Shown piece after piece: positions 6,870 through 59,687 of a stretch of DNA of 64,000 bases; positions within the stretch are counted from its first letter, which is position 1, and each line of letters starts with the position of its first letter. The translations under genes were made by a program, and so were the position numbers. The notes below the pieces were generated by a model, which had not been told where the DNA came from, ran no database searches, and was given only the letters and a program-made list of their open reading frames with translations. The stretch spans positions 298,019 to 362,018 of IMG/VR virus record IMGVR_UViG_3300042502_001233; one strand, written 5' to 3'.

Positions 6870-7517
6870 TTATTTTCTTCCTTGAACCCAACCTTCGTTT
6901 AAGTAGGTTTCAAGGTCTTCTTTTTTAATTTTTTTGTTGGTACCATCTTTGGTTATCCAACATGTACCATATTGACTGTTTAATTCGCCAATACCAGTGT
7001 TTTTCATTTTTTCTGATATTAATATCTTAGATTCCTCTGAATGTTTTTTACCATCCCAATCGTGAAAATATTTTTTTTCACGTTTACCTTCTTTATATGC
7101 TCTTTTTAAACCGTTAGAATGATTTTGTTTATAATTTATTTTAAATTCTAAATCATTTTCTCTTTTTTTAGCTAAACCTTTACCACCAGAACTTGAACAT
7201 TTAATCATATGTTCTTCACTTGAAAACCCACCTTGACCACCTTCCTTAAGGTTCATACATTTACCATCAGAAATTAATTCTTTGGTAACTAACTCAATCT
7301 CTCTAAGAACTAATTCTTCTCTTGTCGGTAAGAACTCAAGTATTTCTTTGGTATGGTTTTCTACACCATATTTTCTAATTGAATATCTGAGTATTTTACC
7401 ACTCCCCATATAACCATCATCTAGGTTACTTGTGCTATGCATCCCTACATACCATCGTCCAGTTACATTACATGTTGTTTTATATATGTAATGTATGTTT
7501 CTTTCTTTTCTTGCCAT
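6870..7517 (-). CDS. GIY-YIG (Seg-like) homing endonuclease
   Basis: HYIYKTT...WYVGMH...YMGSG; NUMOD3-like GKKHSEESKILIS. Confidence 0.92.
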   Translation of the reverse strand: MARKERNIHYIYKTTCNVTGRWYVGMHSTSNLDDGYMGSGKILRYSIRKYGVENHTKEILEFLPTREELVLREIELVTKELISDGKCMNLKEGGQGGFSSEEHMIKCSSSGGKGLAKKRENDLEFKINYKQNHSNGLKRAYKEGKREKKYFHDWDGKKHSEESKILISEKMKNTGIGELNSQYGTCWITKDGTNKKIKKEDLETYLNEGWVQGRK

Positions 7518-7574
7518 TTTACTTCTTTCTAAATAAATATCTAGAAATTATAAAAAGTACAAAAAAGTTTAAGG

Positions 7575-7648
7575 TGGAAGTAACGGGACTCGAACCCGTG
7601 TTCTCGCAACATCAGCCGCTTTATACTATCCTATTGTACTATACTCCC
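7575..7648 (-). ncRNA. tRNA-like RNA with Ala-type acceptor (G3:U70) and 4-nt anticodon loop
   Basis: GGGAGTA/TACTTCC-A acceptor, D and T arms intact; central hairpin GCGGC-TGAT-GTTGC. Confidence 0.6.
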
Positions 7649-24742: not shown

Positions 24743-26705
24743 TTTGTGATTCCTTAAAAGATTGAATATAAGATAATAAGCAAAAGCAGTTCTGTCTGAC
24801 TAAGCAGTTTTGATTCCTAAATAGAATTAATATATGTAAATTGTACAGGATGCTGGAGTAACCACCTTGTATCTTGCGATTCCCATAAGTTTATGTATAT
24901 GTAAAATAAAACAAGAATAACAATAACGCATCAACTGTTTCGATTCCCTTACTGAATAAGTATAAGTATAAGTATGATAGTAACCGTACTAGGAAATGTG
25001 GCTTTGTGATTCTAATATATAATTGGTATAGGTTTTTTTTTATAACACGCTTGCATAGGTGCAACAAGGTTTGTGATTCCATTACAGAATAAGTTTAAAT
25101 ATAATTTATTACAATACTGAGCAGTATTCTTGATAGTTGTGATTCCTTTACAGATTAGGTATTAGTGTTATTGTTTACAACAGTGCGCAACAAAATATTG
25201 TTGTTTTGATTCTTGTACAGAATATGTGTAAGTACATCCATCGAACCATATAAACGCCTCATCAATATTGTGATTCCCTACAGAATTATTAAAAGTATTA
25301 TTAAGTCACCTTGCAAAGCCGCAGCCCGAATTGTGATTCCTTATGGGTTAATTATAAGTACAATAAGTAAAGCAATTGGATTAGCAATGACTGTTTTTCG
25401 ATTCCTCACAGATTAATTATATATACGATGTTGTCAATTTGATACAATAAGTACAAGATTGTGATTCACTACAGAATAAATATAAGTACGTTAGGTATTC
25501 TTAACACTAATGGTTGCTCAATCTTGTGATTCCCTACAGAATGGGTATAAGAACAATATGTTTTTCAACTGTAGCCTTGGCAACACCGTTGTGATTCCAT
25601 ACAGAATGAATATAAGTACAGTACACCTACTTCCATAAACATTATATTACGTTGTGATTCCCTTACAGGATAAGTATAAATGTAAAAAGGGTGTTTTGGA
25701 TTGATATAACGTTATGATTCCTTTTTGGATTAAGTATAAATATATTTTATAATGGGTTTAGCCTAAATCACCAAGAATTTTGATTCCCACACAGAATGGA
25801 TATAAGTATAATATCACCAGAAGGTACCTTGGTATTAGACAATTGTGATTCCATTACAGAATGAGTATAAGTACAGTAGATTATGATTTTGAATTTAGCG
25901 GTTGTGATTCCCATACAGAATGGGTATAAGTACAGTTTTAATGATTTTCATCGCTTTGTTTAGCGTGTTGTGATTCCCGTACAGAATGGGTATAAGTACA
26001 GTGGTGTAATCATTCTTCTGTAGTTTCTGTATGTTGTGATTCCCCTACAGAATGGGTGTAAGTACAATAATCCATATTTTTACTGCACTGGCAGAACAGT
26101 TTTGATTCCCTACAGAATTTCAATGAACGTAATTCCCTTACGGATGTTAGTTAAGTTCGTCAAGTCTACTACTTTTGATTCTTATACAGAATGAGTATAA
26201 GTACAGCTCCCACCGTCACGAATATACTTGTCACTACCGTTTTGATTCCCTAAAGATTATGTATAGGTACAATCAAAACCTTCAAAATGAATGCAACCTA
26301 GCGTTGTGATTCCAGAGTAACGGGCCGAATGCTAATTGCATTGTGATTCCGTTATAGAATAGGTATAAGTACAGTTAATATAAAAAAACAAGGCAAATTG
26401 TCAAGGTTGTGATTCCCCTACAGAATGGGTACAAGTACTGTACTGGGAGCTACCCAGTTGGAACCTGATACGTTGTGATTCACCTACAGAATGGGTATAA
26501 GTACAATAGGATTCGGAGATACCCTTTTTACTTTATTGTTGTGATTCCCCTACAGAATGGGTATAAGTACAATATTAACACCAGGTTTTGTTAAATGTTT
26601 CACGTTGTGATTCCCCTACAGAATGGGTATAAGTACAATGCACTTTTACTAGTTGGGTGTATACATATAGTTGTGATTCCCCTACAGAATGGGTATAAGT
26701 ACAAT
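24743..26705 (-). CRISPR. CRISPR array, about 31 repeats; plus-strand consensus GTTGTGATTCCCCTACAGAATGGGTATAAGTACAAT (36 bp); spacers mostly 29-31 bp; leader at the cas6 end
   Basis: Exact copies at 26670, 26604, 26538; near-exact at 26472, 26406, 26033, 25967, 25901; 66-bp period; progressively degenerate to 24743 (possible remnant near 24680); partial repeats at 26303 and 26099. Strand inferred from cas genes and decay polarity. Confidence 0.97.
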
Positions 26706-26803
26706 AGACCCTTTGTAAAGACTTGTAAACAAAGGGTTTTTTGCACTTTTCATAATAAAAAATGGTTTAAAATTACCATATAATCCATAAATAACCCCAT
26801 TTT
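26706..26803 (-). promoter_or_regulatory. CRISPR leader with repeat-adjacent inverted repeat ACCCTTTGT...ACAAAGGGT
   Basis: AT-rich 98 bp between cas6 stop and the best-conserved repeat. Confidence 0.65.
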
Positions 26804-27502
26804 TTAATTGTAAATCTTATGATTCTCTGTTTTATATATTGTACCAAACCCACTTCCAGTTGACTGACCGATACCTATTGTGTATAACAATTTAGCAACT
26901 TTCTTACTGCAATTGATATTCAACTGACAATGATTGGCTTTGTTGGCAACATTCTTAACCATTATTGTTTTAACTTTGTTAAATGGTCTATTTTCAACAA
27001 CAACATCAAAATCTTTCAAATCCAAAGTAGAATCAATCTTGCTTAATTTATTAACTAAATAGGTTTTCAATTTTGAATTGAATTCGACATCATTTAACGT
27101 TAAATACTGATAGGTTTTCATATCCGTATATTCTTTAACTATAAACGGTGACAACGTAATAAAATAGTTCCAACCATTATGGAACGTTTCTTCGACGTAA
27201 TCCACCCCAGAAAAACGCATACCAAAAAAAAGTTCTGGATTGGTTAACACACCCATTAACAATTTTTGAATAAATTCATTATCATTAGATGTTACCGTAA
27301 AATAAGCTCCTTTTTCAAAATTAAGCGTTTTATCTTCTAAGTTTATTCTACCACCTTGCAAAATAGAAATAGAGTAATCTGATTTGGTATCGTGATATTT
27401 GTTATCTTTCCCTAAACACTTATGAACGTAACCATTTAATAATGATTGGTTGTTCACTGGGACTGGCGTTGTATTCTTGCTAAAATTAAATTTTACTCTC
27501 AT
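26804..27502 (-). CDS. cas6: CRISPR endoribonuclease Cas6
   Basis: C-terminal G-loop GIGQSTGSGFG; TLSP motif; adjacent to array. Confidence 0.92.
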   Translation of the reverse strand: MRVKFNFSKNTTPVPVNNQSLLNGYVHKCLGKDNKYHDTKSDYSISILQGGRINLEDKTLNFEKGAYFTVTSNDNEFIQKLLMGVLTNPELFFGMRFSGVDYVEETFHNGWNYFITLSPFIVKEYTDMKTYQYLTLNDVEFNSKLKTYLVNKLSKIDSTLDLKDFDVVVENRPFNKVKTIMVKNVANKANHCQLNINCSKKVAKLLYTIGIGQSTGSGFGTIYKTENHKIYN

Positions 27503-27504
27503 AA

Positions 27505-28335
27505 TTATTGTTTTTCTAAACTTATTTCACCAACCAAAACATGGTTGTCATTAATTTCAATTTGGTTTGCTGTTAAGACTTTATTAATAAAAACTAAACC
27601 ACCATCTAACAGCTTTGCAAACCCTTTATTTTTTTTTATTTTTTCAATATCATCTTCTGATACTGGGACATATATCTCACCGTTCAAACGATGAATATTA
27701 TCAAGACCTTTAAAAACTGTTAAAACCGTTCTATTGTTTTTATTAATATTAGTTAATTCTGAATCAACACCATATATAGAGTCATACAGCGGTTTTTTAG
27801 CTTTTTTGTTTAACTCAATAAATATGTTTTTAATTCTTTCATCTTTTGAATTTAACACCATTTTTTTAAACTCATTGAATGAGATTGATAAACAATCGAT
27901 GTTAAATATTTTATTCATGTTTGCAATGAACTCATTGAACAAGTCAATTTCCAATAGTCTTGATACACGCTCCCAATTAACATAAGCAACTGGATTCCAA
28001 CCATTATGAACAGCTTTTTTTAATTGTATCTTTTCACCAATGAGTTTTCCGTTTTTATCTTTTAAACTGGTAATGTTCAAATAAGATTCTTTGGCTTTTT
28101 TTACTAGGTATTGATTTTGTTCATAAAAAACAGTGCGATTCATTGGTACTGGTCTTTCACCAAATAAAACATGGAGCATATTTGAAATTTGTTGAGCCGT
28201 TATTGGCTCAACAAACTCAGGGATATCTGTTCTTTTAATACGTTCACCATCATTAAAACTGATGTCTTTTGTTTTTCTATTTTTTCTAAACAAACCCGCA
28301 TTTCTGAACTCTAGAATTAGATATTTATTCAACAT
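27505..28335 (-). CDS. cas5: Cas5, I-F2 (Cas5fv)-like with central helical insert
   Basis: N-terminal strand YLILEF, helix ITAQQISNMLHVLFGER, C-terminal LNGEIYV...LDGGLVFI; located between cas7 and cas6. Confidence 0.7.
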   Translation of the reverse strand: MLNKYLILEFRNAGLFRKNRKTKDISFNDGERIKRTDIPEFVEPITAQQISNMLHVLFGERPVPMNRTVFYEQNQYLVKKAKESYLNITSLKDKNGKLIGEKIQLKKAVHNGWNPVAYVNWERVSRLLEIDLFNEFIANMNKIFNIDCLSISFNEFKKMVLNSKDERIKNIFIELNKKAKKPLYDSIYGVDSELTNINKNNRTVLTVFKGLDNIHRLNGEIYVPVSEDDIEKIKKNKGFAKLLDGGLVFINKVLTANQIEINDNHVLVGEISLEKQ

Positions 28336-29401
28336 CTTCTTCTACTTTTTTAATTTTTTTAGATTTAGAAACCTCGGCTTTTTTAGCTTTTTTAGCTAAT
28401 TTAACGGCCTCATAATTGTCAATTAATGATTGACGAGTTTTTTCAGATTCTTCTTTATCTTCAAGTTGGTAATACGTTTCAGCTTCAAAATTAATTGCTT
28501 CCACGTCTGATAATGTTTTGATTGAAACCCAATTATCCTCTGAATACATTGTGTCTTCAATAGGGTCCATAACCAATTTATATTCCAAAACACCCATATT
28601 GGCAAAAGCATTCTTTTTGTGAATGTCTAAAGTTAGTAACTTTTTAAACAAATCTTTAACAATAAACAAAACATTTTCGTTTGTCAACGTAAATCCATAT
28701 TCTGGAATTTTAACGTCTGAACCAATTTGTTGGTAATACCCTAATTCTGAATTAAAATTAGGTAATTTAGAACTCATCAATTGTTTGTAGAATGGGAATA
28801 AATCTGAATTAAACGCATAACGGTCAAATATTTGGTCACATGACACAAATTGTAACTGCATTAAATCAATCACACCGCTGGTTTGATAAGTAATATCACC
28901 AATAACTTCTTTTTTGTAGAAAGAGTTATCCGAACCTTCTTTATCAACATCTGTGTTTTTGGCACCACTTCTACTAAATGTCTCTAATGTAGATACTGAA
29001 TCATTGATTTGAACTGCATCAGTTATTGATAACGCACCAGAACGTTTTAACGTCTCATCTTTGGCGAATAAATACCCTCTAAGCAAAGATGTTGGTGATG
29101 CGATAAAAGAATACAACAACGCTTCGTTATGGATTAAATTAGGTGATTGTGTTTGCGATTCTTTGATGAAAATGTTATGACGCAAACAATCTGAACTAAT
29201 TACAATTTTATAGTTAGCATCATTTCCAGCACCAAAAAATCTTTTTTTAGCATAAGACACGTTGTCATGTCTTGTTTTCATGTGGTTAAAATTTTCGGTA
29301 GGTAAATTATTGAACACCCATTTTTGTTCGCTGCTGTCATAATTTACGATACCATTACCGTTTAGTTTCATTCTAAAAAGAATGTTTTTTACTTTACTCA
29401 T
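28325..29401 (-). CDS. cas7: Cas7 backbone subunit, I-F2 (Cas7fv)-like
   Basis: GNGIVNYD, ISSDCLRHNIF, ASPTSLLRGY, LKRSGAL, SFYKKEVIGDITY, QLQFVSCDQIFDR. Confidence 0.85.
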   Translation of the reverse strand: MSKVKNILFRMKLNGNGIVNYDSSEQKWVFNNLPTENFNHMKTRHDNVSYAKKRFFGAGNDANYKIVISSDCLRHNIFIKESQTQSPNLIHNEALLYSFIASPTSLLRGYLFAKDETLKRSGALSITDAVQINDSVSTLETFSRSGAKNTDVDKEGSDNSFYKKEVIGDITYQTSGVIDLMQLQFVSCDQIFDRYAFNSDLFPFYKQLMSSKLPNFNSELGYYQQIGSDVKIPEYGFTLTNENVLFIVKDLFKKLLTLDIHKKNAFANMGVLEYKLVMDPIEDTMYSEDNWVSIKTLSDVEAINFEAETYYQLEDKEESEKTRQSLIDNYEAVKLAKKAKKAEVSKSKKIKKVEEDVE

Positions 29402-29436
29402 TTTTTTTTATTTTAAATAATTGTTATTTTATGATA

Positions 29437-29474
29437 CAAGTATACTTAATTAATTTTAATTTGTCAAGTATACT
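29437..29474 (-). promoter_or_regulatory. host-type promoter for cas7-cas5-cas6 with two AGTATACT palindromes
   Basis: TATACTTG (-7-like, 29437-29444) and TTGACA upstream; CAAGTATACT occurs at 29437 and 29465. Confidence 0.55.
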
Positions 29475-29494
29475 ATGAAATATTTTTTCAAATT

Positions 29495-31777
29495 TTATAT
29501 AAGCACTTCTAAATCAGATTTTTTTATTAAACCAAAACTAGGGTGATAAACTTTATCAAACCTAATATACGGTGTTTCTATTTTTCTAGCATTAACATAA
29601 ACACCTTCTTCGGATAAGTATTTTTTAGAATTAATCATATCATTATAATCAAATCTACCATCATTGTTATTACGCAATAATTCCCAAGTTTGTTTTACCT
29701 TTTTAAACGTGTTAGAGTTTTCATCAAATTCTTCACTAAAAGTTTTTCTTATTGTAACAGAAAAAGTGTCAGTAAAATTATTTGGGTCATCGTGATATTG
29801 TGCTATAACAAATACACTGTTACCATTAGACCTTAATTTGTTACCACCAGCTGTTATTGTTTTTGTTTTTGATTTAGAAAAATACATAACAGGATAGATT
29901 TTAGTTAAACAATCCAAACTCTTAGCCAAGGTTTCTCTTAACTCTCTAACCAATATTTTTTCATACATCGCTTGAAATTCATTATAGATAACATAAAATC
30001 TATCAATAGATAAATTTTCACCACTATATTGTTTTAAATGTGCAAACCAAGAATTAGATAAATTGTTAGTATACAAAATTTCTCTCATTTTGGTTTCACT
30101 TCTATTATCAAATAGCATAACATAAACCTCTGGGCTCAAATAATAACCCCATCTGTTACATCTACCAATACGTTGTAAAGTTGTTTCTGGTGATAACACT
30201 GATTCATATAATTTATTGAATGATATGTCTAAACTAGACTGTATTATAGGTGTACCCATAACATTTGGTTTAGTTAAACTTCTATCGGAAGTTTTACCAT
30301 AGTCTTCATATAATTTAGCAAAATTTTTCTCCCTATCTGATTTTACAAAATCAGAATGGAACAGAGAAGCACATGAAAATTTGTTTTTGTTTAACTGCGA
30401 TGTTTTTATCGCGTTCATAACTACCAAAGAAGATGAATTTGGTTCTACGATTGCTTCTCCATCTATCGTATTGAACAAAAATTCAACACTATGTGGTGCA
30501 TTGAAATGTCTGTGTTTTTCTGGTAAAATCAAAGTTTTAGCACCTATAGAATCCCATAACGCGCACATGTTTGTTGGTGTTGCTGATAGTAAAAGAGTGT
30601 TAGCTCTGGTGAAACGGTTTCTAGTTGTCATTATGTTTATAAAACTTGAAAACAAAGCAGTTTCTTTACCAATTAATTCATGAAATTCATCAAATATAAC
30701 ATCAGAGTTTATAATGGTGTATAACCTAGATGCTACGTTATTGTTGATACTAGGTGTTAGATAATTATCTATATTAGTTACTATTATATTTGAATCGAAC
30801 CCCTTTGAATTATGTGTACTTTTTTTAACTTCGCTAGAGTAAAACAACTCAACTGAAATATTATTATCCCCAAACAATTTTAACTCTTCGTTTATTGTTT
30901 TATATACAGATTGAGCAATTACGTTAGTTGGGCAAACCCAAATAACTCTTTTATTCCTTGTTATTGCAAACAACATCCCTAACAAAGTTTTACCGAAACC
31001 AGCTGGTGCGTTAATTTGTGTTGTTTTTTCTGTTGATTCAACAATTGAAAGTTGGTTAGTAAAACGTTCATTACCAAAAAATTTATGTTTTTTAATGTCG
31101 ATACCATATTCTACAGTATTGTAGTTTGAAATCAAATCTTTAATTTCTTCATCAGTTGCCGTTTCATATTTTGAGGCTAACCTATCAGCAGAAATCACAC
31201 AAGACCTAATTAAAAGATTTTCAGCATTTTTTTGATAACAATCATCACCAACCATATAAAACATTGGAGTATTTTTAGGGACGTAGTCTTTTTCCTCAAA
31301 ATAAATTCTATCGTTAGAAACGTTTTTCTTTATGATATCATTAGCAAAACCCATCATAATTTTAAACTCTTCTTCTGTAATATTTTTCTCAATATCCGTG
31401 TCTTTATATTTACCAAATTCATTACTAATACCGTGATGCCAATAAATAACGTTTAGAATTTTTTCTAATGTTTCTTTATTTATACCGTTTAAATATCTAC
31501 TTAAAAAAGCCCAACCTATTTCATTATGCCTAAACTTTTTGTCGGTAGGTAATTTTTCTTCAATTTGGTCCTCAGATAAACCTTTATTTAACTTTTTTTG
31601 AAAGAATTCAGTGCATTTACCGATATCGTGCAACAGTGATGAAACTTTTATTACTAATAACGTTTCGTCATTAATTTCTAAAATCGTTTGTCTCGCAATT
31701 TCTTCTGCAAACTTTGAAACCAAAATAGAGTGGTCTTCCAAACTTTGACCAGAACTTTTTGCTAAAATGATACTCAT
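29495..31777 (-). CDS. cas3: Cas3 HD nuclease-helicase (no Cas2 fusion)
   Basis: LAKS..SLEDH, LLHDIGK, RHNE, HHG, SADRLAS; APAGFGKT, FDEFH, SAT, SLDISF, QRIGRCNR. Confidence 0.96.
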   Translation of the reverse strand: MSIILAKSSGQSLEDHSILVSKFAEEIARQTILEINDETLLVIKVSSLLHDIGKCTEFFQKKLNKGLSEDQIEEKLPTDKKFRHNEIGWAFLSRYLNGINKETLEKILNVIYWHHGISNEFGKYKDTDIEKNITEEEFKIMMGFANDIIKKNVSNDRIYFEEKDYVPKNTPMFYMVGDDCYQKNAENLLIRSCVISADRLASKYETATDEEIKDLISNYNTVEYGIDIKKHKFFGNERFTNQLSIVESTEKTTQINAPAGFGKTLLGMLFAITRNKRVIWVCPTNVIAQSVYKTINEELKLFGDNNISVELFYSSEVKKSTHNSKGFDSNIIVTNIDNYLTPSINNNVASRLYTIINSDVIFDEFHELIGKETALFSSFINIMTTRNRFTRANTLLLSATPTNMCALWDSIGAKTLILPEKHRHFNAPHSVEFLFNTIDGEAIVEPNSSSLVVMNAIKTSQLNKNKFSCASLFHSDFVKSDREKNFAKLYEDYGKTSDRSLTKPNVMGTPIIQSSLDISFNKLYESVLSPETTLQRIGRCNRWGYYLSPEVYVMLFDNRSETKMREILYTNNLSNSWFAHLKQYSGENLSIDRFYVIYNEFQAMYEKILVRELRETLAKSLDCLTKIYPVMYFSKSKTKTITAGGNKLRSNGNSVFVIAQYHDDPNNFTDTFSVTIRKTFSEEFDENSNTFKKVKQTWELLRNNNDGRFDYNDMINSKKYLSEEGVYVNARKIETPYIRFDKVYHPSFGLIKKSDLEVLI

Positions 31778-31818
31778 ATTTATTTTTATTATATAAACTT
31801 ATTATTTTTAATACTAGA

Positions 31819-31848
31819 AAATAAAAGGTGCTTTCACACCTTTTATTT
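31819..31848. terminator. intrinsic terminator upstream of cas3
   Basis: AAATAAAAGGTG-CTTTCA-CACCTTTTATTT. Confidence 0.7.
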
Positions 31849-33449
31849 TAAATTTCAAACGTTGTAAACTCACCATCGATAAAGTTCAAATGCTGAGCCC
31901 TACCATCGTTATGGATAATAACATGTGATTGTAACCATGAACTTGGTCCTTGATTATATCCAACTCGTAGTCTAGTTGTTGTACCAACCGCCACAGCACC
32001 ATCTTTTCTTCCAGGACTATGGTAATGTCCCACGACAATCTTAGTGTTCAATTTTCTAAACTGTAGCAAAGAACCTCTACTACCGTTAGAACCTATATCA
32101 CCATGTTGTCCTAACTCCCAACCTTTAACTTTGTAAGATGCTGCTCTTCCAAGTGTTTTAAATTTAGGGAATTTTTCATTGATAAGACTAGGGATAACAC
32201 CTTTAACGTTGTAAGGGTCTTTACCGTACTGTTCTAACAAAATGTCAGAATACTTCATGTACAATCTAGAGTTCTTATACGTAGGTTGTTTCTTCCAATC
32301 TTCATTCTTTAACCATCTATCCAAGAAATCATCGTGATTACTTCTTACGATTACCACATTTTTAAATTTCTCAAAAGACTCAAGACCAGCCATCATAGCA
32401 TTAACTTCTTTTTCCAAGTCGTTAGTACCAGTCATCTCTTTACCGTATTGGATAAACGGGTCTTTCATCTGGTGATGACTAATTGAATCACCATCAAACA
32501 CATCATGTAACACAACATGTTCTGGTTTTATTTTGTCCAAAAATGATAGCGTTGTGTCTAACACTTCTTGGTCATGGTGACCGTAGTGAATGTCACCCAA
32601 TACAGCAGCAGCTATTGAGTTTATTTGACTTATACCACCATCTTCAACACGATAGATTAAATCGGTAAAATTACCTGATTTATCATCGGACGTTACTTGT
32701 CTAACAAAAAATGTTTCATCATCTTTAATTTCGACAATTGCAAATCCAAAAGTATGGTGAAACTCTCCTACTTTACCAGCTTTAGCATCAGTGTAGTTCT
32801 TCATAGTAACAGCACCAGTGGTAAGCATGATTTTAGGTTTGTTTCCTTCCAACACAGGAATCATCTCTAGTTGTACCTTCGGACTACCAAAGATACATGA
32901 GTTAACCCCGCTAAGGGCTTGCATACCAGTCATTGGGTTTACAGCTGTTGGTTGTACTTTGATGTCTGACAAAATAGAAACATACTTGTGTATGTCATGT
33001 CTGTTTGCATCTAAGTAAGGTTCAACCTCTTTTTTCCAATGTTCTTCATTTTTATTGTTGTTGGTCCAGATACTCGTAGGGTTTTTGTAACGCCCAGCGA
33101 TTACCAAGATTTCAGCATCAATAAATTCAGCATAAGCTTCCATGTTTCGCAACAGTTTCTTATGGACTGGTGTGTTGTTTTGTGCCCAACTAATAATGAA
33201 TCTTTTTTTCTCATCACTATGTTGTTTGGTCTTGGCTTTGATGTACTGCTCTGGTTCAACTTCTTGTTTTTCTTTGAACCCAAGTTTTTTAAACCATTTT
33301 CTTACTGTTCTTTCTGAAAGATTAAATTCATCACCTAATTTTATAGCTAATCGCTCAACTGTTAAATTATTATCTAACCTATTATCATATTCTGATTTAA
33401 AACGTGTAATTATTTCATCAGTTAAATCTTTAAATTTAATTTTGTTCAT
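31848..33449 (-). CDS. HTH plus calcineurin-like phosphoesterase/nuclease, T5 A1-like
   Basis: SERTVRKW HTH; AQNNTPVH; GDIH, HDVFDG, SNHD, HGD, GHYH. Confidence 0.75.
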   Translation of the reverse strand: MNKIKFKDLTDEIITRFKSEYDNRLDNNLTVERLAIKLGDEFNLSERTVRKWFKKLGFKEKQEVEPEQYIKAKTKQHSDEKKRFIISWAQNNTPVHKKLLRNMEAYAEFIDAEILVIAGRYKNPTSIWTNNNKNEEHWKKEVEPYLDANRHDIHKYVSILSDIKVQPTAVNPMTGMQALSGVNSCIFGSPKVQLEMIPVLEGNKPKIMLTTGAVTMKNYTDAKAGKVGEFHHTFGFAIVEIKDDETFFVRQVTSDDKSGNFTDLIYRVEDGGISQINSIAAAVLGDIHYGHHDQEVLDTTLSFLDKIKPEHVVLHDVFDGDSISHHQMKDPFIQYGKEMTGTNDLEKEVNAMMAGLESFEKFKNVVIVRSNHDDFLDRWLKNEDWKKQPTYKNSRLYMKYSDILLEQYGKDPYNVKGVIPSLINEKFPKFKTLGRAASYKVKGWELGQHGDIGSNGSRGSLLQFRKLNTKIVVGHYHSPGRKDGAVAVGTTTRLRVGYNQGPSSWLQSHVIIHNDGRAQHLNFIDGEFTTFEI

Positions 33450-56308: not shown

Positions 56309-56333
56309 ATATTAGTCACAAAAAAGTGACCAG

Positions 56334-56407
56334 TGCAGTAGACGAGACTCGAACTCGCAACCCTTGACTTGGCAAGCCAATACTCTAACCAATTGAGCTA
56401 CTACTGC
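56334..56407 (-). tRNA. tRNA-Gly(GCC)
   Basis: Full cloverleaf; TTGGC-TTGCCAA-GTCAA. Confidence 0.93.
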
Positions 56408-56546
56408 ATTTATGCCTCTCTCTGCATCCGTCACACCCCATTTGTATTCTGTTAATCTCCTAAGACTGTTTGCTACGCTTGACATAAAGTCTCAGCCCTT
56501 AAAAGGATTTTCCTAACGGTAAATCGGTGTCAAAAACCAGTATTTC

Positions 56547-57359
56547 TTAATACCACCACCATTTAGCTTGGTTTCTGTTTTGGTAATGAAACTCTTGGAA
56601 GTCTTGACTCCAAGCGCTAGCACTGGTCCAATCAGTCCAATCACTATCGGTGATAAACTCTCTTTCAGTCATTTCGTTACCTTGTTCTTTGTGCCACTCA
56701 TGAGAGTCGTTAATGAACATGGTGTTGAGGTTCTTTCTAAGAGCCATTTTGTCTTTGCGTCTGTTTCTTTTTGAGACACTTTTTAAGAACCAAGAATAAC
56801 CACCCTCATTGTAAGGATTCATAATAGTTCTAAGATGCCAAAGTTGGTCTCTTACAAATCTTAATTCTCGTTCTAACTCACCATCAACCACTTTACGGTG
56901 AGTGATGTAACTGTTTCTGATTTTCATAACAAAATAAAAATCTGGAACGTAAGACGCTGAGTAATATTTAGCTATAGTACCGTTCCAACGTGGTTTATCA
57001 TCTAAATGATTGTGTCGGAAATACTTTGCCACTTGTGGCGGCAATTTTAAATATTGTTCCTCAGACATTAATTTTATCTTAGGTTTTCTATCAATCACAT
57101 AACCTCTCTTTTTTTCGTAGAACACAGTCGTTGGAGACCATGTTAACGTAGAGCAATTATCAATGATGTATTGGAATACCCAAGCATCTTGTCTTCTAGA
57201 AATGTCTTCTCTTAATTCCAAATAAGCTTCATAGCCTTTGTGTATTGGTTTTTCAAGTTCAACATAACCTAAATTTTTGATGGCCATTTCAAGCTCATCT
57301 TCTTTTTCCATTAACGCTAAATAGCGTTTGTAATCTTTGTGTTTTGTGTTTTTACTCAT
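56547..57359 (-). CDS. hypothetical protein within tRNA cluster
   Basis: 270-aa ORF. Confidence 0.75.
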   Translation of the reverse strand: MSKNTKHKDYKRYLALMEKEDELEMAIKNLGYVELEKPIHKGYEAYLELREDISRRQDAWVFQYIIDNCSTLTWSPTTVFYEKKRGYVIDRKPKIKLMSEEQYLKLPPQVAKYFRHNHLDDKPRWNGTIAKYYSASYVPDFYFVMKIRNSYITHRKVVDGELERELRFVRDQLWHLRTIMNPYNEGGYSWFLKSVSKRNRRKDKMALRKNLNTMFINDSHEWHKEQGNEMTEREFITDSDWTDWTSASAWSQDFQEFHYQNRNQAKWWWY

Positions 57360-57488
57360 TTGTTCTCGGTATAGGGATTTGACCCTTAGTACCTCGAACC
57401 TTTTAAAATTGCAATCATAGTTTTCCTTTTTTATTAATTAGTATTTTATTAGAGTACAAATATACGAACTCTTTTTATAAATAGCAAG

Positions 57489-57758
57489 TTATTTGTTATA
57501 ATTTTTTAAATTATGTTCTACACACATAACCGCTTCTGCGATAGCCACTTTGGCATCTTCAACGTCTTTTGCCCAAGTAACCACACCCAAATTAGGTATC
57601 GTTACCTTGATGAAACCGTCTGGTCTTCTTTCAATGACGCTATTTCTGGTATCTTCTACCAACTTCTCAATTCTTTCTCTGTGCTTTCTAGAGCGTTCTG
57701 CTAACCTAGCTTTACTTTCCTCTGAAAGCTTTCCACCTAAGTATACAAAACTTTCCAT
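57489..57758 (-). CDS. hypothetical protein with HicB-like C-terminal segment
   Basis: VTIPNLGVVTWAKDVEDAKVAIAEAV. Confidence 0.55.
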   Translation of the reverse strand: MESFVYLGGKLSEESKARLAERSRKHRERIEKLVEDTRNSVIERRPDGFIKVTIPNLGVVTWAKDVEDAKVAIAEAVMCVEHNLKNYNK

Positions 57759-57773
57759 AATTAATATTTTTAG

Positions 57774-57853
57774 AGCCGATGGAGGGACTCGAACCCCCGA
57801 TGTTTGTATACCGCTTTACAAAAGCGGTGCTGTCGCCACTGAGCCACATCGGC
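57774..57853 (-). tRNA. tRNA-Thr(TGT), enlarged variable loop
   Basis: GCCGATG acceptor; CCGCT-TTTGTAA-AGCGG. Confidence 0.85.
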
Positions 57854-57956
57854 ATTTAATAGCTATCAAATCGTGGATATCATTGATTTGAAATAAACTT
57901 ATTATCCTTTCTGCAAGGAATGACAACCATCTCTGAAGTTTACTTATCACTATTTG

Positions 57957-58030
57957 AGCCTCAGACAGGAGTCGAACCTGCGACCTGCTGATTACAAATC
58001 AGCTGCTCTGGCCATCTGAGCTACTGAGGC
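57957..58030 (-). tRNA. tRNA-Thr(TGT)
   Basis: GCTGA-TTTGTAA-TCAGC. Confidence 0.95.
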
Positions 58031-58038
58031 ATATATTG

Positions 58039-58122
58039 TGGGCAAGGAGGGATTCGAACCCCCGAAGTCGAATGACAGATGTTTTACAGACACCGCGCTT
58101 TGAGCCGCTTGCATACTTACCC
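58039..58122 (-). tRNA. tRNA-Tyr(GTA)
   Basis: GGTGT-CTGTAAA-ACATC, long variable arm. Confidence 0.93.
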
Positions 58123-58186
58123 ATAACGGCCTATAACGTTTGCCACTCGATGGGTATTTCTTTCTCGCAGTACCATTTCTGCCGTG

Positions 58187-58265
58187 TGGGCCTAGAGGGA
58201 ATCGAACCTACAAGAATTAACACGATTTTACAGACCGCTGAGCTCACCACCTGCTCAATAGACCC
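58187..58265 (-). tRNA. tRNA-Tyr(GTA), imperfect T stem
   Basis: GCGGT-CTGTAAA-ATCGT. Confidence 0.75.
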
Positions 58266-58271
58266 AATTTC

Positions 58272-58330
58272 AGGGTGGTGTATCGGTTTCAAATTAAAAG
58301 TTTGATGATAAAGATTGCTGAAACCACCCT
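58272..58330 (-). ncRNA. mini RNA: CAGCAA stem carrying an isolated Lys(TTT) anticodon stem-loop
   Basis: AGGGTGG-TTTCAGCAA...TCAAA-CTTTTAA-TTTGA...CCACCCT. Confidence 0.6.
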
Positions 58331-58334
58331 TTAG

Positions 58335-58406
58335 TTGGAATGTAGGGACTCGAACCCTAAAAATGACGGTCAAAGTGTCATATGTTGCCAATTACATCAC
58401 ATTCCA
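58335..58406 (-). tRNA. tRNA-Gln(TTG)
   Basis: TGGAATG acceptor; loop CTTTGAC. Confidence 0.85.
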
Positions 58407-58417
58407 GTATAATATTG

Positions 58418-58488
58418 TTGTCCTACAAGGATTCGAACCTTGAATGACTGGCTCAAAACCAGTAGTGTTACCGTTACACTATAGGACA
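58418..58488 (-). tRNA. tRNA-Gln(TTG)
   Basis: ACTGG-TTTTGAG-CCAGT. Confidence 0.92.
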
Positions 58489-58661
58489 ATAACTCTAATT
58501 CTATGCTCGTCCTCACGCAACTCTATAAATTAGTAACAGTCTTATCTACAACGTCAGTAGGACTTAAAAGGAACCACTCATTTATATCCTTTCTATCAAC
58601 GGGGAATCACTCCCATGCTTGGCGTAATCCATACATCACTGCATGTCTATCCTACTTATTG

Positions 58662-58735
58662 AGCGATTATTCGGATTCGAACCGAAACCAGAGACTTGGA
58701 AGGCCCCTGTGCTAGCCGTTAAACACCATAATCGC
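58662..58735 (-). tRNA. tRNA-Gly(TCC)
   Basis: GGGGC-CTTCCAA-GTCTC. Confidence 0.92.
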
Positions 58736-58786
58736 AATTTTCTAATTTATTTATTTCATCTAAAACATAGTTTATATATTATTTTG

Positions 58787-58859
58787 TGCTCCCGAAGGGC
58801 CTCGAACCCTTTACCCCTCCGTTAAAAGCGGAGTGCCCGTCCACATGAGCTTCGAAAGC
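58787..58859 (-). tRNA. tRNA-Lys(TTT)
   Basis: CTCCG-CTTTTAA-CGGAG. Confidence 0.85.
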
Positions 58860-58883
58860 AATTATCCATTTCTGGATTTTTAG

Positions 58884-58957
58884 TACCCCCGAAGAGACTC
58901 GAACTCTTGACTCCCCGCTTAAAAGGCGGGTGCTCTAACCAACTGAGCTACGAGGGT
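58884..58957 (-). tRNA. tRNA-Lys(TTT)
   Basis: CCCGC-CTTTTAA-GCGGG. Confidence 0.95.
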
Positions 58958-59045
58958 ATATTACACTCATAACCAATTGGTCTGAGTGACTTAACGTTTA
59001 CGCTTTATGTTCTTTATATTTTTCATTTGTTTTATTGTTGTTTTT

Positions 59046-59121
59046 GGCCTCCCAGAAGGATTCGAACCTTCCATCCATAAGCCCCCAATGGGCTGCGCTT
59101 TTCCTACTAAGCTATGGGACG
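59046..59121 (-). tRNA. atypical tRNA/pseudo-tRNA, anticodon ambiguous (TGG or TTG)
   Basis: D and T arms intact; AGCCC-ATTGG-GGGCT anticodon arm is non-canonical. Confidence 0.5.
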
Positions 59122-59127
59122 CATATT

Positions 59128-59475
59128 TTATTTTTGTCTTTCTTTTAATTCTTCAACCGTTAAATTATAACGATGTAATATTCTATGATGATTCGCACAA
59201 AGGCAAACACATTTTTCAATTTCATTTATAATTTTAACATTAGACCATTTATGGTTACATACAGCGGCTATTGTAAATTCTTTATCATCTTTGTCTATGT
59301 GATGAAAATCTATACAAGCTTTATCCGCTTCCCCACAAACTAAACAAGGTTTTTTTAAGGTTTCTACTAAATCTCTAATTTCTTGTCTTCTTTGTCTTTG
59401 TTTTAAATTATGAATTTCTTTATTGTTTTTAAATTCATTTTGTTTCCATTCTTTTTGTTTTTCTGTCTGTGCCAT
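59128..59475 (-). CDS. small HNH endonuclease
   Basis: CLVCG...DFHH...KCVCLCANHHR. Confidence 0.88.
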   Translation of the reverse strand: MAQTEKQKEWKQNEFKNNKEIHNLKQRQRRQEIRDLVETLKKPCLVCGEADKACIDFHHIDKDDKEFTIAAVCNHKWSNVKIINEIEKCVCLCANHHRILHRYNLTVEELKERQK

Positions 59476-59598
59476 ATTTTCTTTTTATTATAAATATGTT
59501 CAAGTCATACAAAAAGACTAGAATTTATCAAATTATTAGCCATTATTTTCATAATGTTTCCAGTAACCGCTGCGTGGAAGCTATTTGATATGGTTACT

Positions 59599-59687
59599 TC
59601 TAAGTGATGGGACTCGAACCCACATGATGCTTTTTACACAATTCTCGTTTCCAAAACGAGTCGGCTTCCAATTGCCTTCACACCTAG
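59599..59687 (-). tRNA. tRNA-Pro(TGG) with long variable arm
   Basis: CTAGGTG/CACTTAG acceptor; CTCGT-TTTGGAA-ACGAG; T arm GTGGG-TTCGAGT-CCCAT. Confidence 0.7.

What the first reader, a model, noticed from the sequence alone, without database searches (positions are those of the whole stretch)
26804..31777. Compact chimeric type I system: I-F2-like Cas7/Cas5 without Cas8, stand-alone Cas3 and non-Csy4 Cas6
Seen: only four cas genes (cas3, cas7, cas5, cas6), with no room for cas8, cas11, cas1, cas2 or cas4; flanks are the array and an unrelated phosphoesterase. Cas7 motifs (G.GIVNY, IS..CLRH.IF, AS.T.LLRGY, KR, GD..Y, QLQF.S.D..FDR) follow, from my recollection, Shewanella Cas7fv. The 276-aa Cas5 has the Cas5fv layout with a central helical insert, which replaces Cas8 for PAM reading in I-F2. 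Unlike canonical I-F2, Cas3 has no N-terminal Cas2, Cas6 (232 aa, GIGQSTGSGFG) looks like an I-A/I-B-type enzyme rather than Cas6f, and the repeat is not the 28-nt I-F repeat. All catalytic HD and helicase motifs are intact, so this may be a roughly 5-kb phage-borne interference system.
Basis: partly seen in the sequence, partly recalled or inferred. Interest (0 to 1): 0.9.

Follow-up and report, generated by a model that had tools for sequence, protein, structure and literature searches.

The report
Four-gene Cas8-less CRISPR system in phage
A huge phage carries a complete-looking, very small DNA-targeting CRISPR system (Cas3, Cas7, Cas5-like, Cas6 and about 30 spacers) that is related to the minimal type I-F2 system but uses a different RNA-processing enzyme and repeat, and belongs to a large phage-borne family I could not find described.

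Summary
On the minus strand, 26804-31777 encodes cas3, cas7, a cas5-like gene and cas6, followed by a CRISPR array of 31 repeats (24743-26705).

- **Related to I-F2:** Cas7 (hhalign E 1e-30; Foldseek E 5e-19, TM about 0.7) and Cas3, which lacks the Cas2 domain.
- **Not I-F:** Cas6 is a classical Cas6/Cas6b enzyme, and the repeat is 36 nt with 30-nt spacers.
- **Less certain:** the 276-aa protein folds as a RAMP core with a helical insert and best matches Cas5 structures. It has no detectable similarity to Cas5fv.
- **Missing genes:** no cas1, cas2, cas4, cas8 or cas11 among the window's ORFs of 100 aa or more.

The same layout recurs in more than 20 phage-like loci, and the Cas7 family has over 200 clusters at 50% identity. 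All four genes are under purifying selection.

New findings:
- One spacer exactly matches another phage.
- Close relatives share old spacers but carry different leader-end spacers, so arrays turn over without local adaptation genes.
- A conserved degenerate unit inside the array matches the promoter of cas7 (CreR-like autorepression).

Verdict: a new variant of a known kind, of moderate to high interest.

The parts
29495..31777 (-). cas3: stand-alone HD nuclease plus SF2 helicase, 760 aa, no Cas2 domain
   Evidence: Pfam Cas3_HD, DEAD and Cas3-like_C_2. PADLOC Cas3fv 1.6e-65, model positions 108-871 of 951. 27% identity over 750 aa to Acinetobacter Cas2-3fv, starting at its residue 113. PDB best match 9g44_A, I-F2 Cas2-3, 3.7e-38. 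HD residues H50 D51, H83, H114 H115 and D198 and helicase motifs I, II (DEFH), III (SAT) and VI are present.
29439..29467 (-). Sigma-70-like promoter TTGACA-17-TATACT in the cas3-cas7 intergenic region; presumed promoter of cas7-cas5-cas6 and the array
   Evidence: Best promoter-like site in 26650-32000, 11 of 12 matches. The region is conserved in L020, L022 and L023. Its function is inferred.
29460..29475 (-). Target of the psi-spacer. It overlaps the -35 hexamer and has the 5' flank TTTCA
   Evidence: 14 of 16 positions match the first 16 nt of the psi-spacer, with mismatches at positions 6 and 14. It is the only match outside the array in the window; 0.02 are expected by chance. The same pairing occurs in L020, L022 and L023.
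28325..29401 (-). cas7, Cas7fv-like backbone subunit, 358 aa, with an extra C-terminal lysine/glutamate-rich helix (about 316-357)
   Evidence: NCBIfam Cas7fv 3e-24, 85.9 bits, below the 200-bit cut-off. hhalign against Cas7fv: 99.85% probability, E 1.2e-30. AF2 pLDDT 92.5. Foldseek 5o6u, 5o7h and 9g44 Cas7 at E 5e-19 to 7e-15, TM 0.68-0.76 normalised to the target.
27505..28335 (-). cas5-like RAMP protein, 276 aa, with a helical insert at residues 121-198. Presumed 5'-handle cap and PAM reader
   Evidence: AF2 pLDDT 89.9. Foldseek best match is Cas5e 4tvx_H (E 8e-3, probability 0.95), followed by Cas5 of I-B CAST, Cas5d and Cas5a, with low TM of about 0.3. Sits between cas7 and cas6, as cas5fv does in I-Fv loci. 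More than 84 homologues, all in this gene context. No hit in Pfam, NCBIfam, PADLOC or PDB sequences.
26804..27502 (-). cas6, classical Cas6/Cas6b-type endoribonuclease, 232 aa
   Evidence: TIGR01877 at 74.9 bits, above its 58.65 cut-off. PADLOC Cas6b 1e-47. No similarity to Cas6f. PDB Pyrococcus Cas6. Y36, H37 and the glycine-rich loop are invariant across the family.
26706..26803 (-). Leader, 98 nt: T-rich then A-rich tract, then an inverted repeat (about 26708-26736) abutting repeat 1
   Evidence: Read from the sequence. Compared across nine loci; several lineages have a hairpin of different sequence at this place. Its role is inferred.
24743..26705 (-). CRISPR array: 31 repeat units of 36 nt ending in AATCACAAC, spacers of about 30 nt. 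Repeats are perfect next to cas6 and decay distally
   Evidence: The same 36+30 geometry and repeat 3' end occur across the family.
26574..26603 (-). Spacer 2, which targets another phage
   Evidence: 30 of 30 nt match IMGVR_UViG_3300020049_013468 (L028 6025-6054). There are no repeats around the match, and it lies inside an ORF of a head/portal module.
26099..26207 (-). Conserved degenerate unit: psi-repeat, 37-nt psi-spacer (26135-26171), psi-repeat. Candidate CreR-like regulatory crRNA
   Evidence: Conserved in L020, L022 and, in diverged form, L023, while neighbouring spacers differ. Its seed matches the cas7 promoter.

Best explanation
This is a working, self-contained DNA-interference module of a huge phage, derived from the Cas8-less type I-F2 lineage.

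Proposed mechanism:
1. The array is transcribed from the cas6 side.
2. Cas6, of the classical Cas6/Cas6b family, cuts each 36-nt repeat 8 nt before the spacer. This yields crRNAs with a 5' handle AUCACAAC and a 30-nt guide.
3. About five Cas7fv-like subunits coat the guide. The Cas5-like protein caps the 5' handle, and its helical insert reads a short 5' PAM in place of Cas8. The three available sites suggest TC-N.
4. Once an R-loop forms, the stand-alone HD-helicase Cas3 is recruited, as in I-F2, through Cas7, Cas5 and the displaced strand, and degrades the target.
5. The targets are competing phages in the same host.
6. A degenerate crRNA inside the array pairs for only about 16 nt with the -35 region of the cas7 promoter. 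It probably directs Cascade to repress its own operon without cleavage.
7. New spacers enter at the cas6-proximal end using Cas1-Cas2 supplied from elsewhere, either another part of the phage genome or the host.

Shown here: gene identities, Cas7 and Cas3 ancestry, absence of the other cas genes in the window's ORFs of 100 aa or more, a phage target, array turnover, purifying selection, and the seed-promoter match. Inferred: cleavage sites, stoichiometry, the PAM, repression, and the source of adaptation.
For: Gene identities.

Cas7 is specifically I-F2-like.

The gene order cas3-cas7-cas5-cas6 equals canonical I-Fv (cas1f-cas2/3-cas7fv-cas5fv-cas6f).

The Cas5-like fold best matches Cas5 proteins.

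The four-gene layout plus array is conserved down to about 30% identity in more than 20 loci with phage-like neighbours, and none has cas1, cas2, cas4 or cas8 within about 10 kb.

The family is large: 207 Cas7 clusters at E <= 1e-30.

dN/dS is 0.04-0.13 for all four genes.

Spacer 2 matches another viral contig exactly. A spacer of relative L020 hits the same contig with two mismatches, and both protospacers carry the 5' flank CATCT.

Array turnover: window and L022 share 13 collinear old spacers but have 3 versus 10 private leader-end spacers. L021 equals L020 minus its two first spacers.

The psi-spacer seed matches the -35 of the strongest promoter-like site, 0.02 matches being expected by chance, and this is conserved in four phages.

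Published precedent: I-F2 works without Cas8, with Cas5 reading the PAM and Cas7 recruiting Cas3 (PMC12956352). CreR autorepression is described in bioRxiv 10.1101/2023.03.10.532045.
Against: - The Cas5-like protein has no sequence or profile similarity to Cas5fv or any Cas5 model.
- Its structural matches are weak (E 8e-3, TM about 0.3), and Cas5fv is not in the top 50.
- Only one exact and one near-exact protospacer were found. Six other window spacers had no target in IMG/VR, and none was found in isolate phages.
- The PAM rests on three sites.
- No Cas1-Cas2 source was found.
- Nothing here shows expression, crRNA processing or cleavage.
- Most of the array (about repeats 6-10 and 14-31) is decayed and may be non-functional.
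Confidence: 0.75

Rival explanations
1. The module is incomplete by itself. It needs a large subunit or another factor encoded elsewhere in the 362-kb phage genome or by the host, or the upstream 533-aa protein acts as a Cas8 surrogate.
For: The Cas5-like protein (276 aa, helical insert of about 78 aa) is smaller than Cas5fv (337 aa), and its PAM-reading role is unproven. Only 64 kb of the contig could be read. The 533-aa gene sits directly upstream of cas3 in the window, L020, L022 and L023.
Against: The 533-aa gene is absent upstream of cas3 in divergent members (L008, L011, L014, L029), and its only domain match is a phosphoesterase. No Cas8 or Cas11 model matches any of 62 other window ORFs. 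I-F2 shows that a Cas8-less Cascade is sufficient (PMC12956352). The four genes stay tightly linked across the whole family.
Confidence: 0.1
2. The system no longer destroys DNA. It acts mainly as an RNA-guided binder or repressor (gene silencing of host or rival phage, or self-regulation only), or it is a decaying remnant.
For: Much of the array is degenerate. A partial-match regulatory unit exists. One lineage (L011-L013) has replaced the HD catalytic residues of Cas3, so nuclease-independent use occurs in the family. Few spacers have findable targets.
Against: In the window, all HD and helicase motifs are intact. dN/dS of cas3 is about 0.11-0.13. The leader-proximal repeats are perfect, with fresh full-length spacers, one matching a phage 30 of 30. 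Array turnover is polarised.
Confidence: 0.1
3. The locus is a bacterial (Bacteroidota) CRISPR system on a misclassified cellular contig, not a phage system.
For: The only two hits among 185,579 species genomes are Bacteroidota MAG bins. One homologue is labelled 'Bacteroidia bacterium'.
Against: The contig is a 362-kb IMG/VR viral genome. Nearly all window genes run on one strand, and the window has 13 tRNA genes, IF3, SmpB, a sigma factor and homing endonucleases. Relatives carry a Gp23 capsid domain nearby. The MAG contigs are short and have the same phage-like neighbours.
Confidence: 0.05

Closest known systems
Type I-F2 (I-Fv) CRISPR-Cas of Shewanella putrefaciens, Acinetobacter and Legionella plasmids (PDB 5O6U, 5O7H, 9G44)
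   Same: No Cas8 and no Cas11. Gene order cas3-cas7-cas5-cas6-array. Cas7 is homologous (hhalign E 1.2e-30; Foldseek TM about 0.7). Cas3 is closest to Cas2-3 of I-F2. A Cas5 position protein carries a helical insert where Cas5fv has its PAM-reading AH domain.
   Different: No Cas2 domain on Cas3 and no cas1. Cas6 is of the Cas6/Cas6b family, not Cas6f. Repeat is 36 nt with 30-nt spacers, against 27-28 and 32 nt. The Cas5-like protein is 60 aa shorter with no detectable sequence similarity. Cas7 scores below the NCBIfam Cas7fv cut-off and has an extra C-terminal helix. The candidate PAM flank is TC-N, not the CC/GG of I-F. Found in phages rather than plasmids or genomic islands. Total size is 1,626 aa.
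Phage-encoded CRISPR-Cas systems without adaptation genes in huge phages (Al-Shayeb et al. 2020, PMC7162821)
   Same: Huge-phage context. Cas1, Cas2 and Cas4 are absent. Spacers are aimed at other phages.
   Different: That paper describes a I-C variant with Cas5d and a non-Cas3 helicase, plus class 2 systems, and reports a median of six repeats per array. Here the system is I-F2-derived with a true Cas3 and about 30 repeats. No phage record in the GenBank-derived collection encodes this Cas7.
CreR / CreA crRNA-like regulators (bioRxiv 10.1101/2023.03.10.532045)
   Same: Degenerate repeat, psi-spacer, degenerate repeat. Partial (seed-only) complementarity to a site at the -35 of the effector cas promoter, with a PAM-like flank.
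   Different: The unit lies inside the array, not in a cas intergenic region. It is in a phage-borne system of an unlisted variant. No toxin partner is evident. Untested.
In-trans spacer acquisition by systems lacking Cas1-Cas2 (Flavobacterium columnare VI-B using II-C machinery, PMC8092290)
   Same: The array turns over without local adaptation genes. It has 36-bp repeats with 30-bp spacers, GTTGT at the leader-distal repeat end, and poly(T)/poly(A) tracts in the leader.
   Different: No donor system was identified here. Every array found with this repeat core lies beside this family's own cas6. The link is an analogy only.

Membership tests
Type I CRISPR-Cas | Cas3 with an HD nuclease and an SF2 helicase | tested here: met
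   cas3_HD above its cut-off, and all motifs present.
Type I-F2 (I-Fv) | Cas7fv backbone protein | tested here: met
   hhalign E 1.2e-30. Foldseek top six matches are all I-Fv/I-F2 Cas7. However, it scores 85.9 bits against the 200-bit NCBIfam equivalog cut-off, so it is a distant relative rather than an equivalog.
Type I-F2 (I-Fv) | Cas5fv with a PAM-reading alpha-helical (AH) domain | tested here: inconclusive
   RAMP core plus helical insert 121-198. Best structural matches are Cas5 proteins of I-E, I-B, I-C and I-A, and they are weak. No sequence or profile similarity to Cas5fv.
Type I-F2 (I-Fv) | No large (Cas8) and no small (Cas11) subunit | tested here: met
   No space inside the locus. 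No Cas8 or Cas11 match in 62 other window ORFs or in related loci.
Type I-F2 (I-Fv) | Cas2-Cas3 fusion with an adjacent cas1f | tested here: not met
   Cas3 aligns from residue 113 of Cas2-3fv (model positions 108-871). No cas1.
Type I-F2 (I-Fv) | Cas6f (Csy4) and the 27-28-nt I-F repeat with 32-nt spacers | tested here: not met
   Cas6 is Cas6/Cas6b type with no similarity to Cas6f. Repeat 36 nt, spacers 30 nt.
Type I-F2 (I-Fv) | GG PAM (CC on the strand identical to the spacer) | tested here: inconclusive
   Two protospacers have the 5' flank CATCT and the regulatory site has TTTCA. That is three sites only.
Type I-B | Cas8b large subunit with Cas7b, Cas5b and Cas6b | tested here: not met
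   Only Cas6 resembles I-B. Cas7 and Cas3 are I-F2-like, and there is no Cas8b.
CreR-type crRNA-like regulator | Degenerate mini-CRISPR whose psi-spacer partly matches the cas promoter next to a PAM | tested here: met
   conserved in four phages.
CreR-type crRNA-like regulator | Cascade-dependent repression of the cas promoter | not testable with these tools
   Needs a reporter assay.

The most novel reading that the evidence does not exclude
This is an unclassified, phage-specific branch of type I, derived from I-F2 and smaller than it. It exchanged Cas6 and its repeat for a 36-bp-repeat, 30-bp-spacer format so that the adaptation machinery of its Bacteroidota hosts (for example type II-C Cas1-Cas2) loads spacers into the phage array in trans. 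The phage thereby gains adaptive anti-phage immunity without carrying adaptation genes, under CreR-like self-control.
Probability: 0.25. Interest if true: 0.8.

Novelty: new variant of a known kind. Interest (0 to 1): 0.62.

Why it matters
Type I-F2 is presented in the literature as the most compact type I system. This family performs the same job with four proteins totalling 1,626 aa in under 5 kb, and it is abundant and diverse in phage metagenomes. That has three consequences:

1. It offers a second, independent solution to Cas8-free PAM reading and Cas3 recruitment, useful both for mechanism studies and for compact Cas3-based editors.
2. It shows Cas6 and repeat modules being swapped under an otherwise conserved Cascade.
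3. It gives a tractable case of phages holding long, actively renewed arrays without Cas1-Cas2. This bears on how adaptation is shared between hosts and their viruses.

The array-embedded regulatory unit extends CreR-type control to a phage-borne system.

Tried and rejected
- **Known phages:** blastn of the locus and tblastn of Cas7 against 50,697 phage records found nothing.
- **Rfam:** no family on the array.
- **Cas5-like protein:** sequence searches of the protein or its 46-member profile against Pfam, NCBIfam, PADLOC and PDB sequences gave nothing meaningful. Profile comparison with Cas5fv was also negative.
- **BFVD fold search:** returned only one uncharacterised phage protein.
- **Spacer targets:** spacers 1, 3, 4, 5, 11 and 12 had no target in IMG/VR. 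There are no self-targets in the window at up to 5 mismatches, and no significant hit in isolate phages.
- **Host array with the same repeat beside cas1, cas2, cas9 or cas13:** the metagenome scan found 22 loci, and all informative ones lie beside this family's own cas6.
- **Upstream 533-aa gene as a Cas8 substitute:** rejected, because it is not conserved outside the close lineage.
- **CreR-like units in distant family members:** the search gave only ambiguous single-mismatch seeds.
- **Cas13b repeat:** my recollection that the repeat resembles Bacteroidota Cas13b repeats could not be checked. The text search for repeat strings returned only primers, so I do not use it as evidence.
- **Al-Shayeb et al. 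2022 (Cell):** the survey of virus-encoded CRISPR-Cas is not held in the library, so prior description there cannot be excluded.

Full report
**1. What is there**

The window is AT-rich (about 32% GC), nearly all genes run on the minus strand, and it holds 13 tRNA genes. It is part of IMGVR_UViG_3300042502_001233, a 362-kb viral contig. Other window genes include IF3, SmpB, a sigma factor, RNase II/R, NAD-salvage enzymes and homing endonucleases, a typical huge-phage repertoire.

Four minus-strand ORFs occupy the reported interval: 29495-31777, 28325-29401, 27505-28335 and 26804-27502. They are separated by 93 nt, an 11-nt overlap and 2 nt. A CRISPR array follows 98 nt after the last stop codon. 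It has 31 repeat units of 36 nt with spacers of about 30 nt, running from 26705 down to 24743. The repeats next to cas6 are identical; the distal ones decay progressively.

**2. Gene identities**

Cas3 (760 aa) has Cas3_HD, DEAD and Cas3 C-terminal domains.
- Its best PADLOC model is Cas3fv (1.6e-65, against 1.8e-39 for Cas3b), aligned to model positions 108-871 of 951.
- It aligns at 27% identity over 750 residues with an Acinetobacter I-Fv Cas2-3, beginning at that protein's residue 113.
- Its best solved relative is the I-F2 Cas2-3 of 9G44 (3.7e-38), against 1e-6 for a I-C Cas3.
- So it is an I-F2-type Cas3 without the Cas2 domain.
- The HD residues (H50 D51, H83, H114 H115, D198) and helicase motifs I, II (DEFH), III (SAT) and VI are present.

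Cas7 (358 aa) is Cas7fv-like.
- It matches NCBIfam Cas7fv at 3e-24, but at 85.9 bits against a 200-bit cut-off.
- It matches PDB 5O6U Cas7fv at 2e-13.
- A 63-sequence family profile matches a Cas7fv profile with 99.85% probability, E 1.2e-30, over 258 columns.
- The AlphaFold model (pLDDT 92.5) has the six I-Fv/I-F2 Cas7 chains as its best PDB matches (E 5e-19 to 7e-15, TM 0.68-0.76 on the target). The next type, I-B CAST Cas7, follows at 7e-8 and TM about 0.4.
- The family adds a confidently predicted C-terminal lysine/glutamate-rich helix (about 316-357) that canonical Cas7fv lacks.

Cas6 (232 aa) passes the TIGR01877 Cas6 cut-off and matches a PADLOC Cas6b model at 1e-47. It shows no similarity to Cas6f, and its closest solved relatives are Pyrococcus Cas6 proteins. 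Y36, H37 and the glycine-rich loop are invariant in the family.

**3. The 276-aa protein**

No family library, PDB sequence search or 46-sequence profile gives a match. Profile comparison with Cas5fv from three plasmids is negative.

Its AlphaFold model is confident (pLDDT 89.9). It shows a beta-alpha RAMP-like core, a five-helix insert at 121-198, a long beta-hairpin at 206-225 and a C-terminal strand after an invariant glycine motif.

Foldseek's best PDB match is E. coli Cas5e (E 8e-3, probability 0.95). Further matches are Cas5 of I-B CAST, Cas5d and Cas5a, and almost the whole list consists of CRISPR RAMP proteins. TM-scores are low (about 0.3), and Cas5fv is not among the 50 listed.

The gene sits where cas5fv sits in canonical loci, whose order is cas1f-cas2/3-cas7fv-cas5fv-cas6f.

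I therefore call it a Cas5-like RAMP with a helical insert. Its equivalence to Cas5fv is plausible but unproven.

**4. A family, not a one-off**

- The Cas5-like protein has more than 84 homologues down to 32% identity.
- Cas7 finds 468 clusters at 50% identity in 1.84 billion representatives: 391 at E <= 1e-10 and 207 at E <= 1e-30.
- Every locus with enough sequence shows stand-alone cas3, cas7, cas5-like, cas6 and an array with 36-nt repeats and a 66-nt period. The neighbours are phage-like (many small ORFs, IF3, SmpB, sigma factors, a Gp23 domain), and no cas1, cas2, cas4 or cas8 lies within about 10 kb.
- In one lineage cas3 lies after the array.
- Among 185,579 species genomes the pattern-limited scan found only two loci, both Bacteroidota MAG bins. 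That points to the likely host phylum.
- dN/dS against three relatives is 0.04-0.13 for all four genes.

**5. What it does**

Spacer 2 matches 30 of 30 nt inside an ORF of another viral contig, L028, which has a head/portal module and 28% GC. There are no repeats around the match. A spacer of the related 344-kb phage (L020) hits the same contig with two mismatches, and a spacer of the L008 lineage hits it with four.

L028 shares a homing endonuclease (72% nucleotide identity) with the window. This is consistent with the two phages meeting in the same host.

The two good protospacers both have CATCT immediately 5' on the strand identical to the spacer, which is the position of a type I PAM. This fits inter-phage warfare, as reported for other huge phages (PMC7162821).

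**6. The arrays are alive**

The window and L022 (Cas5-like protein 95% identical) share 13 old spacers in the same order. The window has 3 private spacers and L022 has 10 private spacers on the cas6 side of the first shared one. L021 is identical to L020 except that it lacks L020's two first spacers. L020's array also mixes two repeat variants, which suggests recombination between arrays.

So spacers are gained at the leader end, even though no adaptation gene lies in the window or near any family member. A metagenome scan for the repeat core found 22 loci, and every informative array lies beside this family's own cas6. None lies beside cas1, cas2, cas9 or cas13.

The source of integration is therefore open. 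Acquisition in trans has been demonstrated elsewhere (PMC8092290). The 36-bp/30-bp geometry, the GTTGT leader-distal repeat end and the poly(T)/poly(A) leader described there are also seen here. That is analogy, not evidence.

**7. An embedded regulator**

One unit in the middle of the array is conserved in the window, L020, L022 and, in diverged form, L023, while the spacers around it differ. It consists of a 37-nt psi-spacer (26135-26171) between two degenerate repeats.

Its first 16 nt match 29460-29475 (14 of 16, with mismatches at positions 6 and 14). This is the only other match in the window, with 0.02 expected by chance.

The site lies in the 93-nt cas3-cas7 gap. It overlaps the -35 of the best promoter-like element of the locus, TTGACA-17-TATACT, and has the 5' flank TTTCA. 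Complementarity ends after about 16-17 nt.

The same pairing holds in all four phages. In L023 the psi-spacer has changed so that its first 12 nt are identical to the target.

This is the signature of CreR-type autorepression (bioRxiv 10.1101/2023.03.10.532045). It also implies that a functional Cascade reads a TC-N-like flank.

**8. Comparison and novelty**

The system works like I-F2 (PMC12956352) and shares its Cas7, Cas3, gene order and lack of Cas8 and Cas11. It fails four defining features: the Cas2-3 fusion, cas1f, Cas6f, and the I-F repeat. One more, Cas5fv, is unresolved.

The 2025 classification update lists I-F1 to I-F4 and an I-F1/I-F2 intermediate, but nothing with this combination (PMC12669027). 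A Pfam family named 'Cas7fv-like' (PF28157) already tags these Cas7 proteins in the precomputed annotations. So the Cas7 has been noticed by curators, although I found no description of the system.

I rate it a new variant of a known kind.

Noticed in passing
window 26099-26207 and 29439-29475 (minus strand); L020 8862 and 12581; L022 12453; L023 8857 and 11998: A conserved degenerate repeat / 37-nt psi-spacer / repeat unit inside the array. Its seed matches the -35 region of the cas7 promoter, with the flank TTTCA. This is a candidate CreR-like autoregulator of a phage-borne Cascade.
   Followed up: yes
window 24743-26705 compared with L020 11633-13566, L021 5996-6154 and L022 11633-13558: Near-identical phages share old distal spacers but have different leader-end spacers, and L021 equals L020 minus two spacers. 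Acquisition is therefore polarised and ongoing, although no cas1 or cas2 is nearby. L020's array mixes two repeat variants, which suggests recombination between arrays.
   Followed up: yes
window 29495-31777 compared with L020 6560-8842 and L022 6561-8843: Between the window and L020/L022, Cas3 is only 78-79% identical (dS about 1.0), whereas Cas7, the Cas5-like protein and Cas6 are 93-96% identical (dS 0.23-0.72). cas3 seems to have been exchanged or to evolve separately from the Cascade genes.
   Followed up: partly
L011 6299-8800, also L012 and L013: In this groundwater lineage the Cas3 HD catalytic residues are replaced (H to L, H to Y, HH to NN, D to E), while the helicase motifs remain. 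An N-terminal extension of about 70 aa is also present. This may be a nuclease-dead variant.
   Followed up: partly
window 28325-28450 (Cas7 residues about 316-357): Family-wide C-terminal lysine/glutamate-rich single helix on Cas7, predicted with high confidence and absent from canonical Cas7fv. It might help hold the displaced strand, which would be a Cas11-like role.
   Followed up: partly
window 26708-26736 (minus strand); leaders of L010, L014, L020, L022, L023 and L025: An inverted repeat directly upstream of the first repeat. Several lineages have a hairpin of different sequence at the same place, preceded by T-rich and A-rich tracts.
   Followed up: partly
L025 9301-14977 and L047: Alternative gene order, cas7-cas5-cas6-array-cas3, in the two Bacteroidota MAG contigs.
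   Followed up: no
L040 6631-8938: An array with the same repeat core on a 42% GC contig, next to a 436-aa protein of which only the last 60 or so residues match Cas6. No cas3, cas7 or cas5 was detected in the 9.8 kb.
   Followed up: no
window 6870-7517 and L028 6924-7617: A homing endonuclease gene is shared at 72% nucleotide identity between this phage and the phage targeted by spacer 2. An odd tRNA-like gene (7573-7648, two-base anticodon call) lies beside it in the window.
   Followed up: partly
window 26376-26405 (spacer 5) and 29453-29468: Spacer 5 also begins with CTTGACAA, matching the same promoter -35 region for 8 nt plus 2 more. It lacks a TC flank and is not conserved in relatives, so this is probably chance.
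   Followed up: no
window 26303-26338: A truncated repeat unit only 1 nt after repeat 6, marking a deletion or recombination scar in the array. Repeats 11-13 are again nearly perfect, so the array looks composite.
   Followed up: no
window 56333-59687: A cluster of 12 tRNA genes with duplicated Thr, Tyr, Gln and Lys species. Elsewhere in the window are SmpB, IF3, RNase II/R, DHFR, NAMPT, Sir2, NADAR, Thg1 and a glutamate-synthase domain protein.
   Followed up: no
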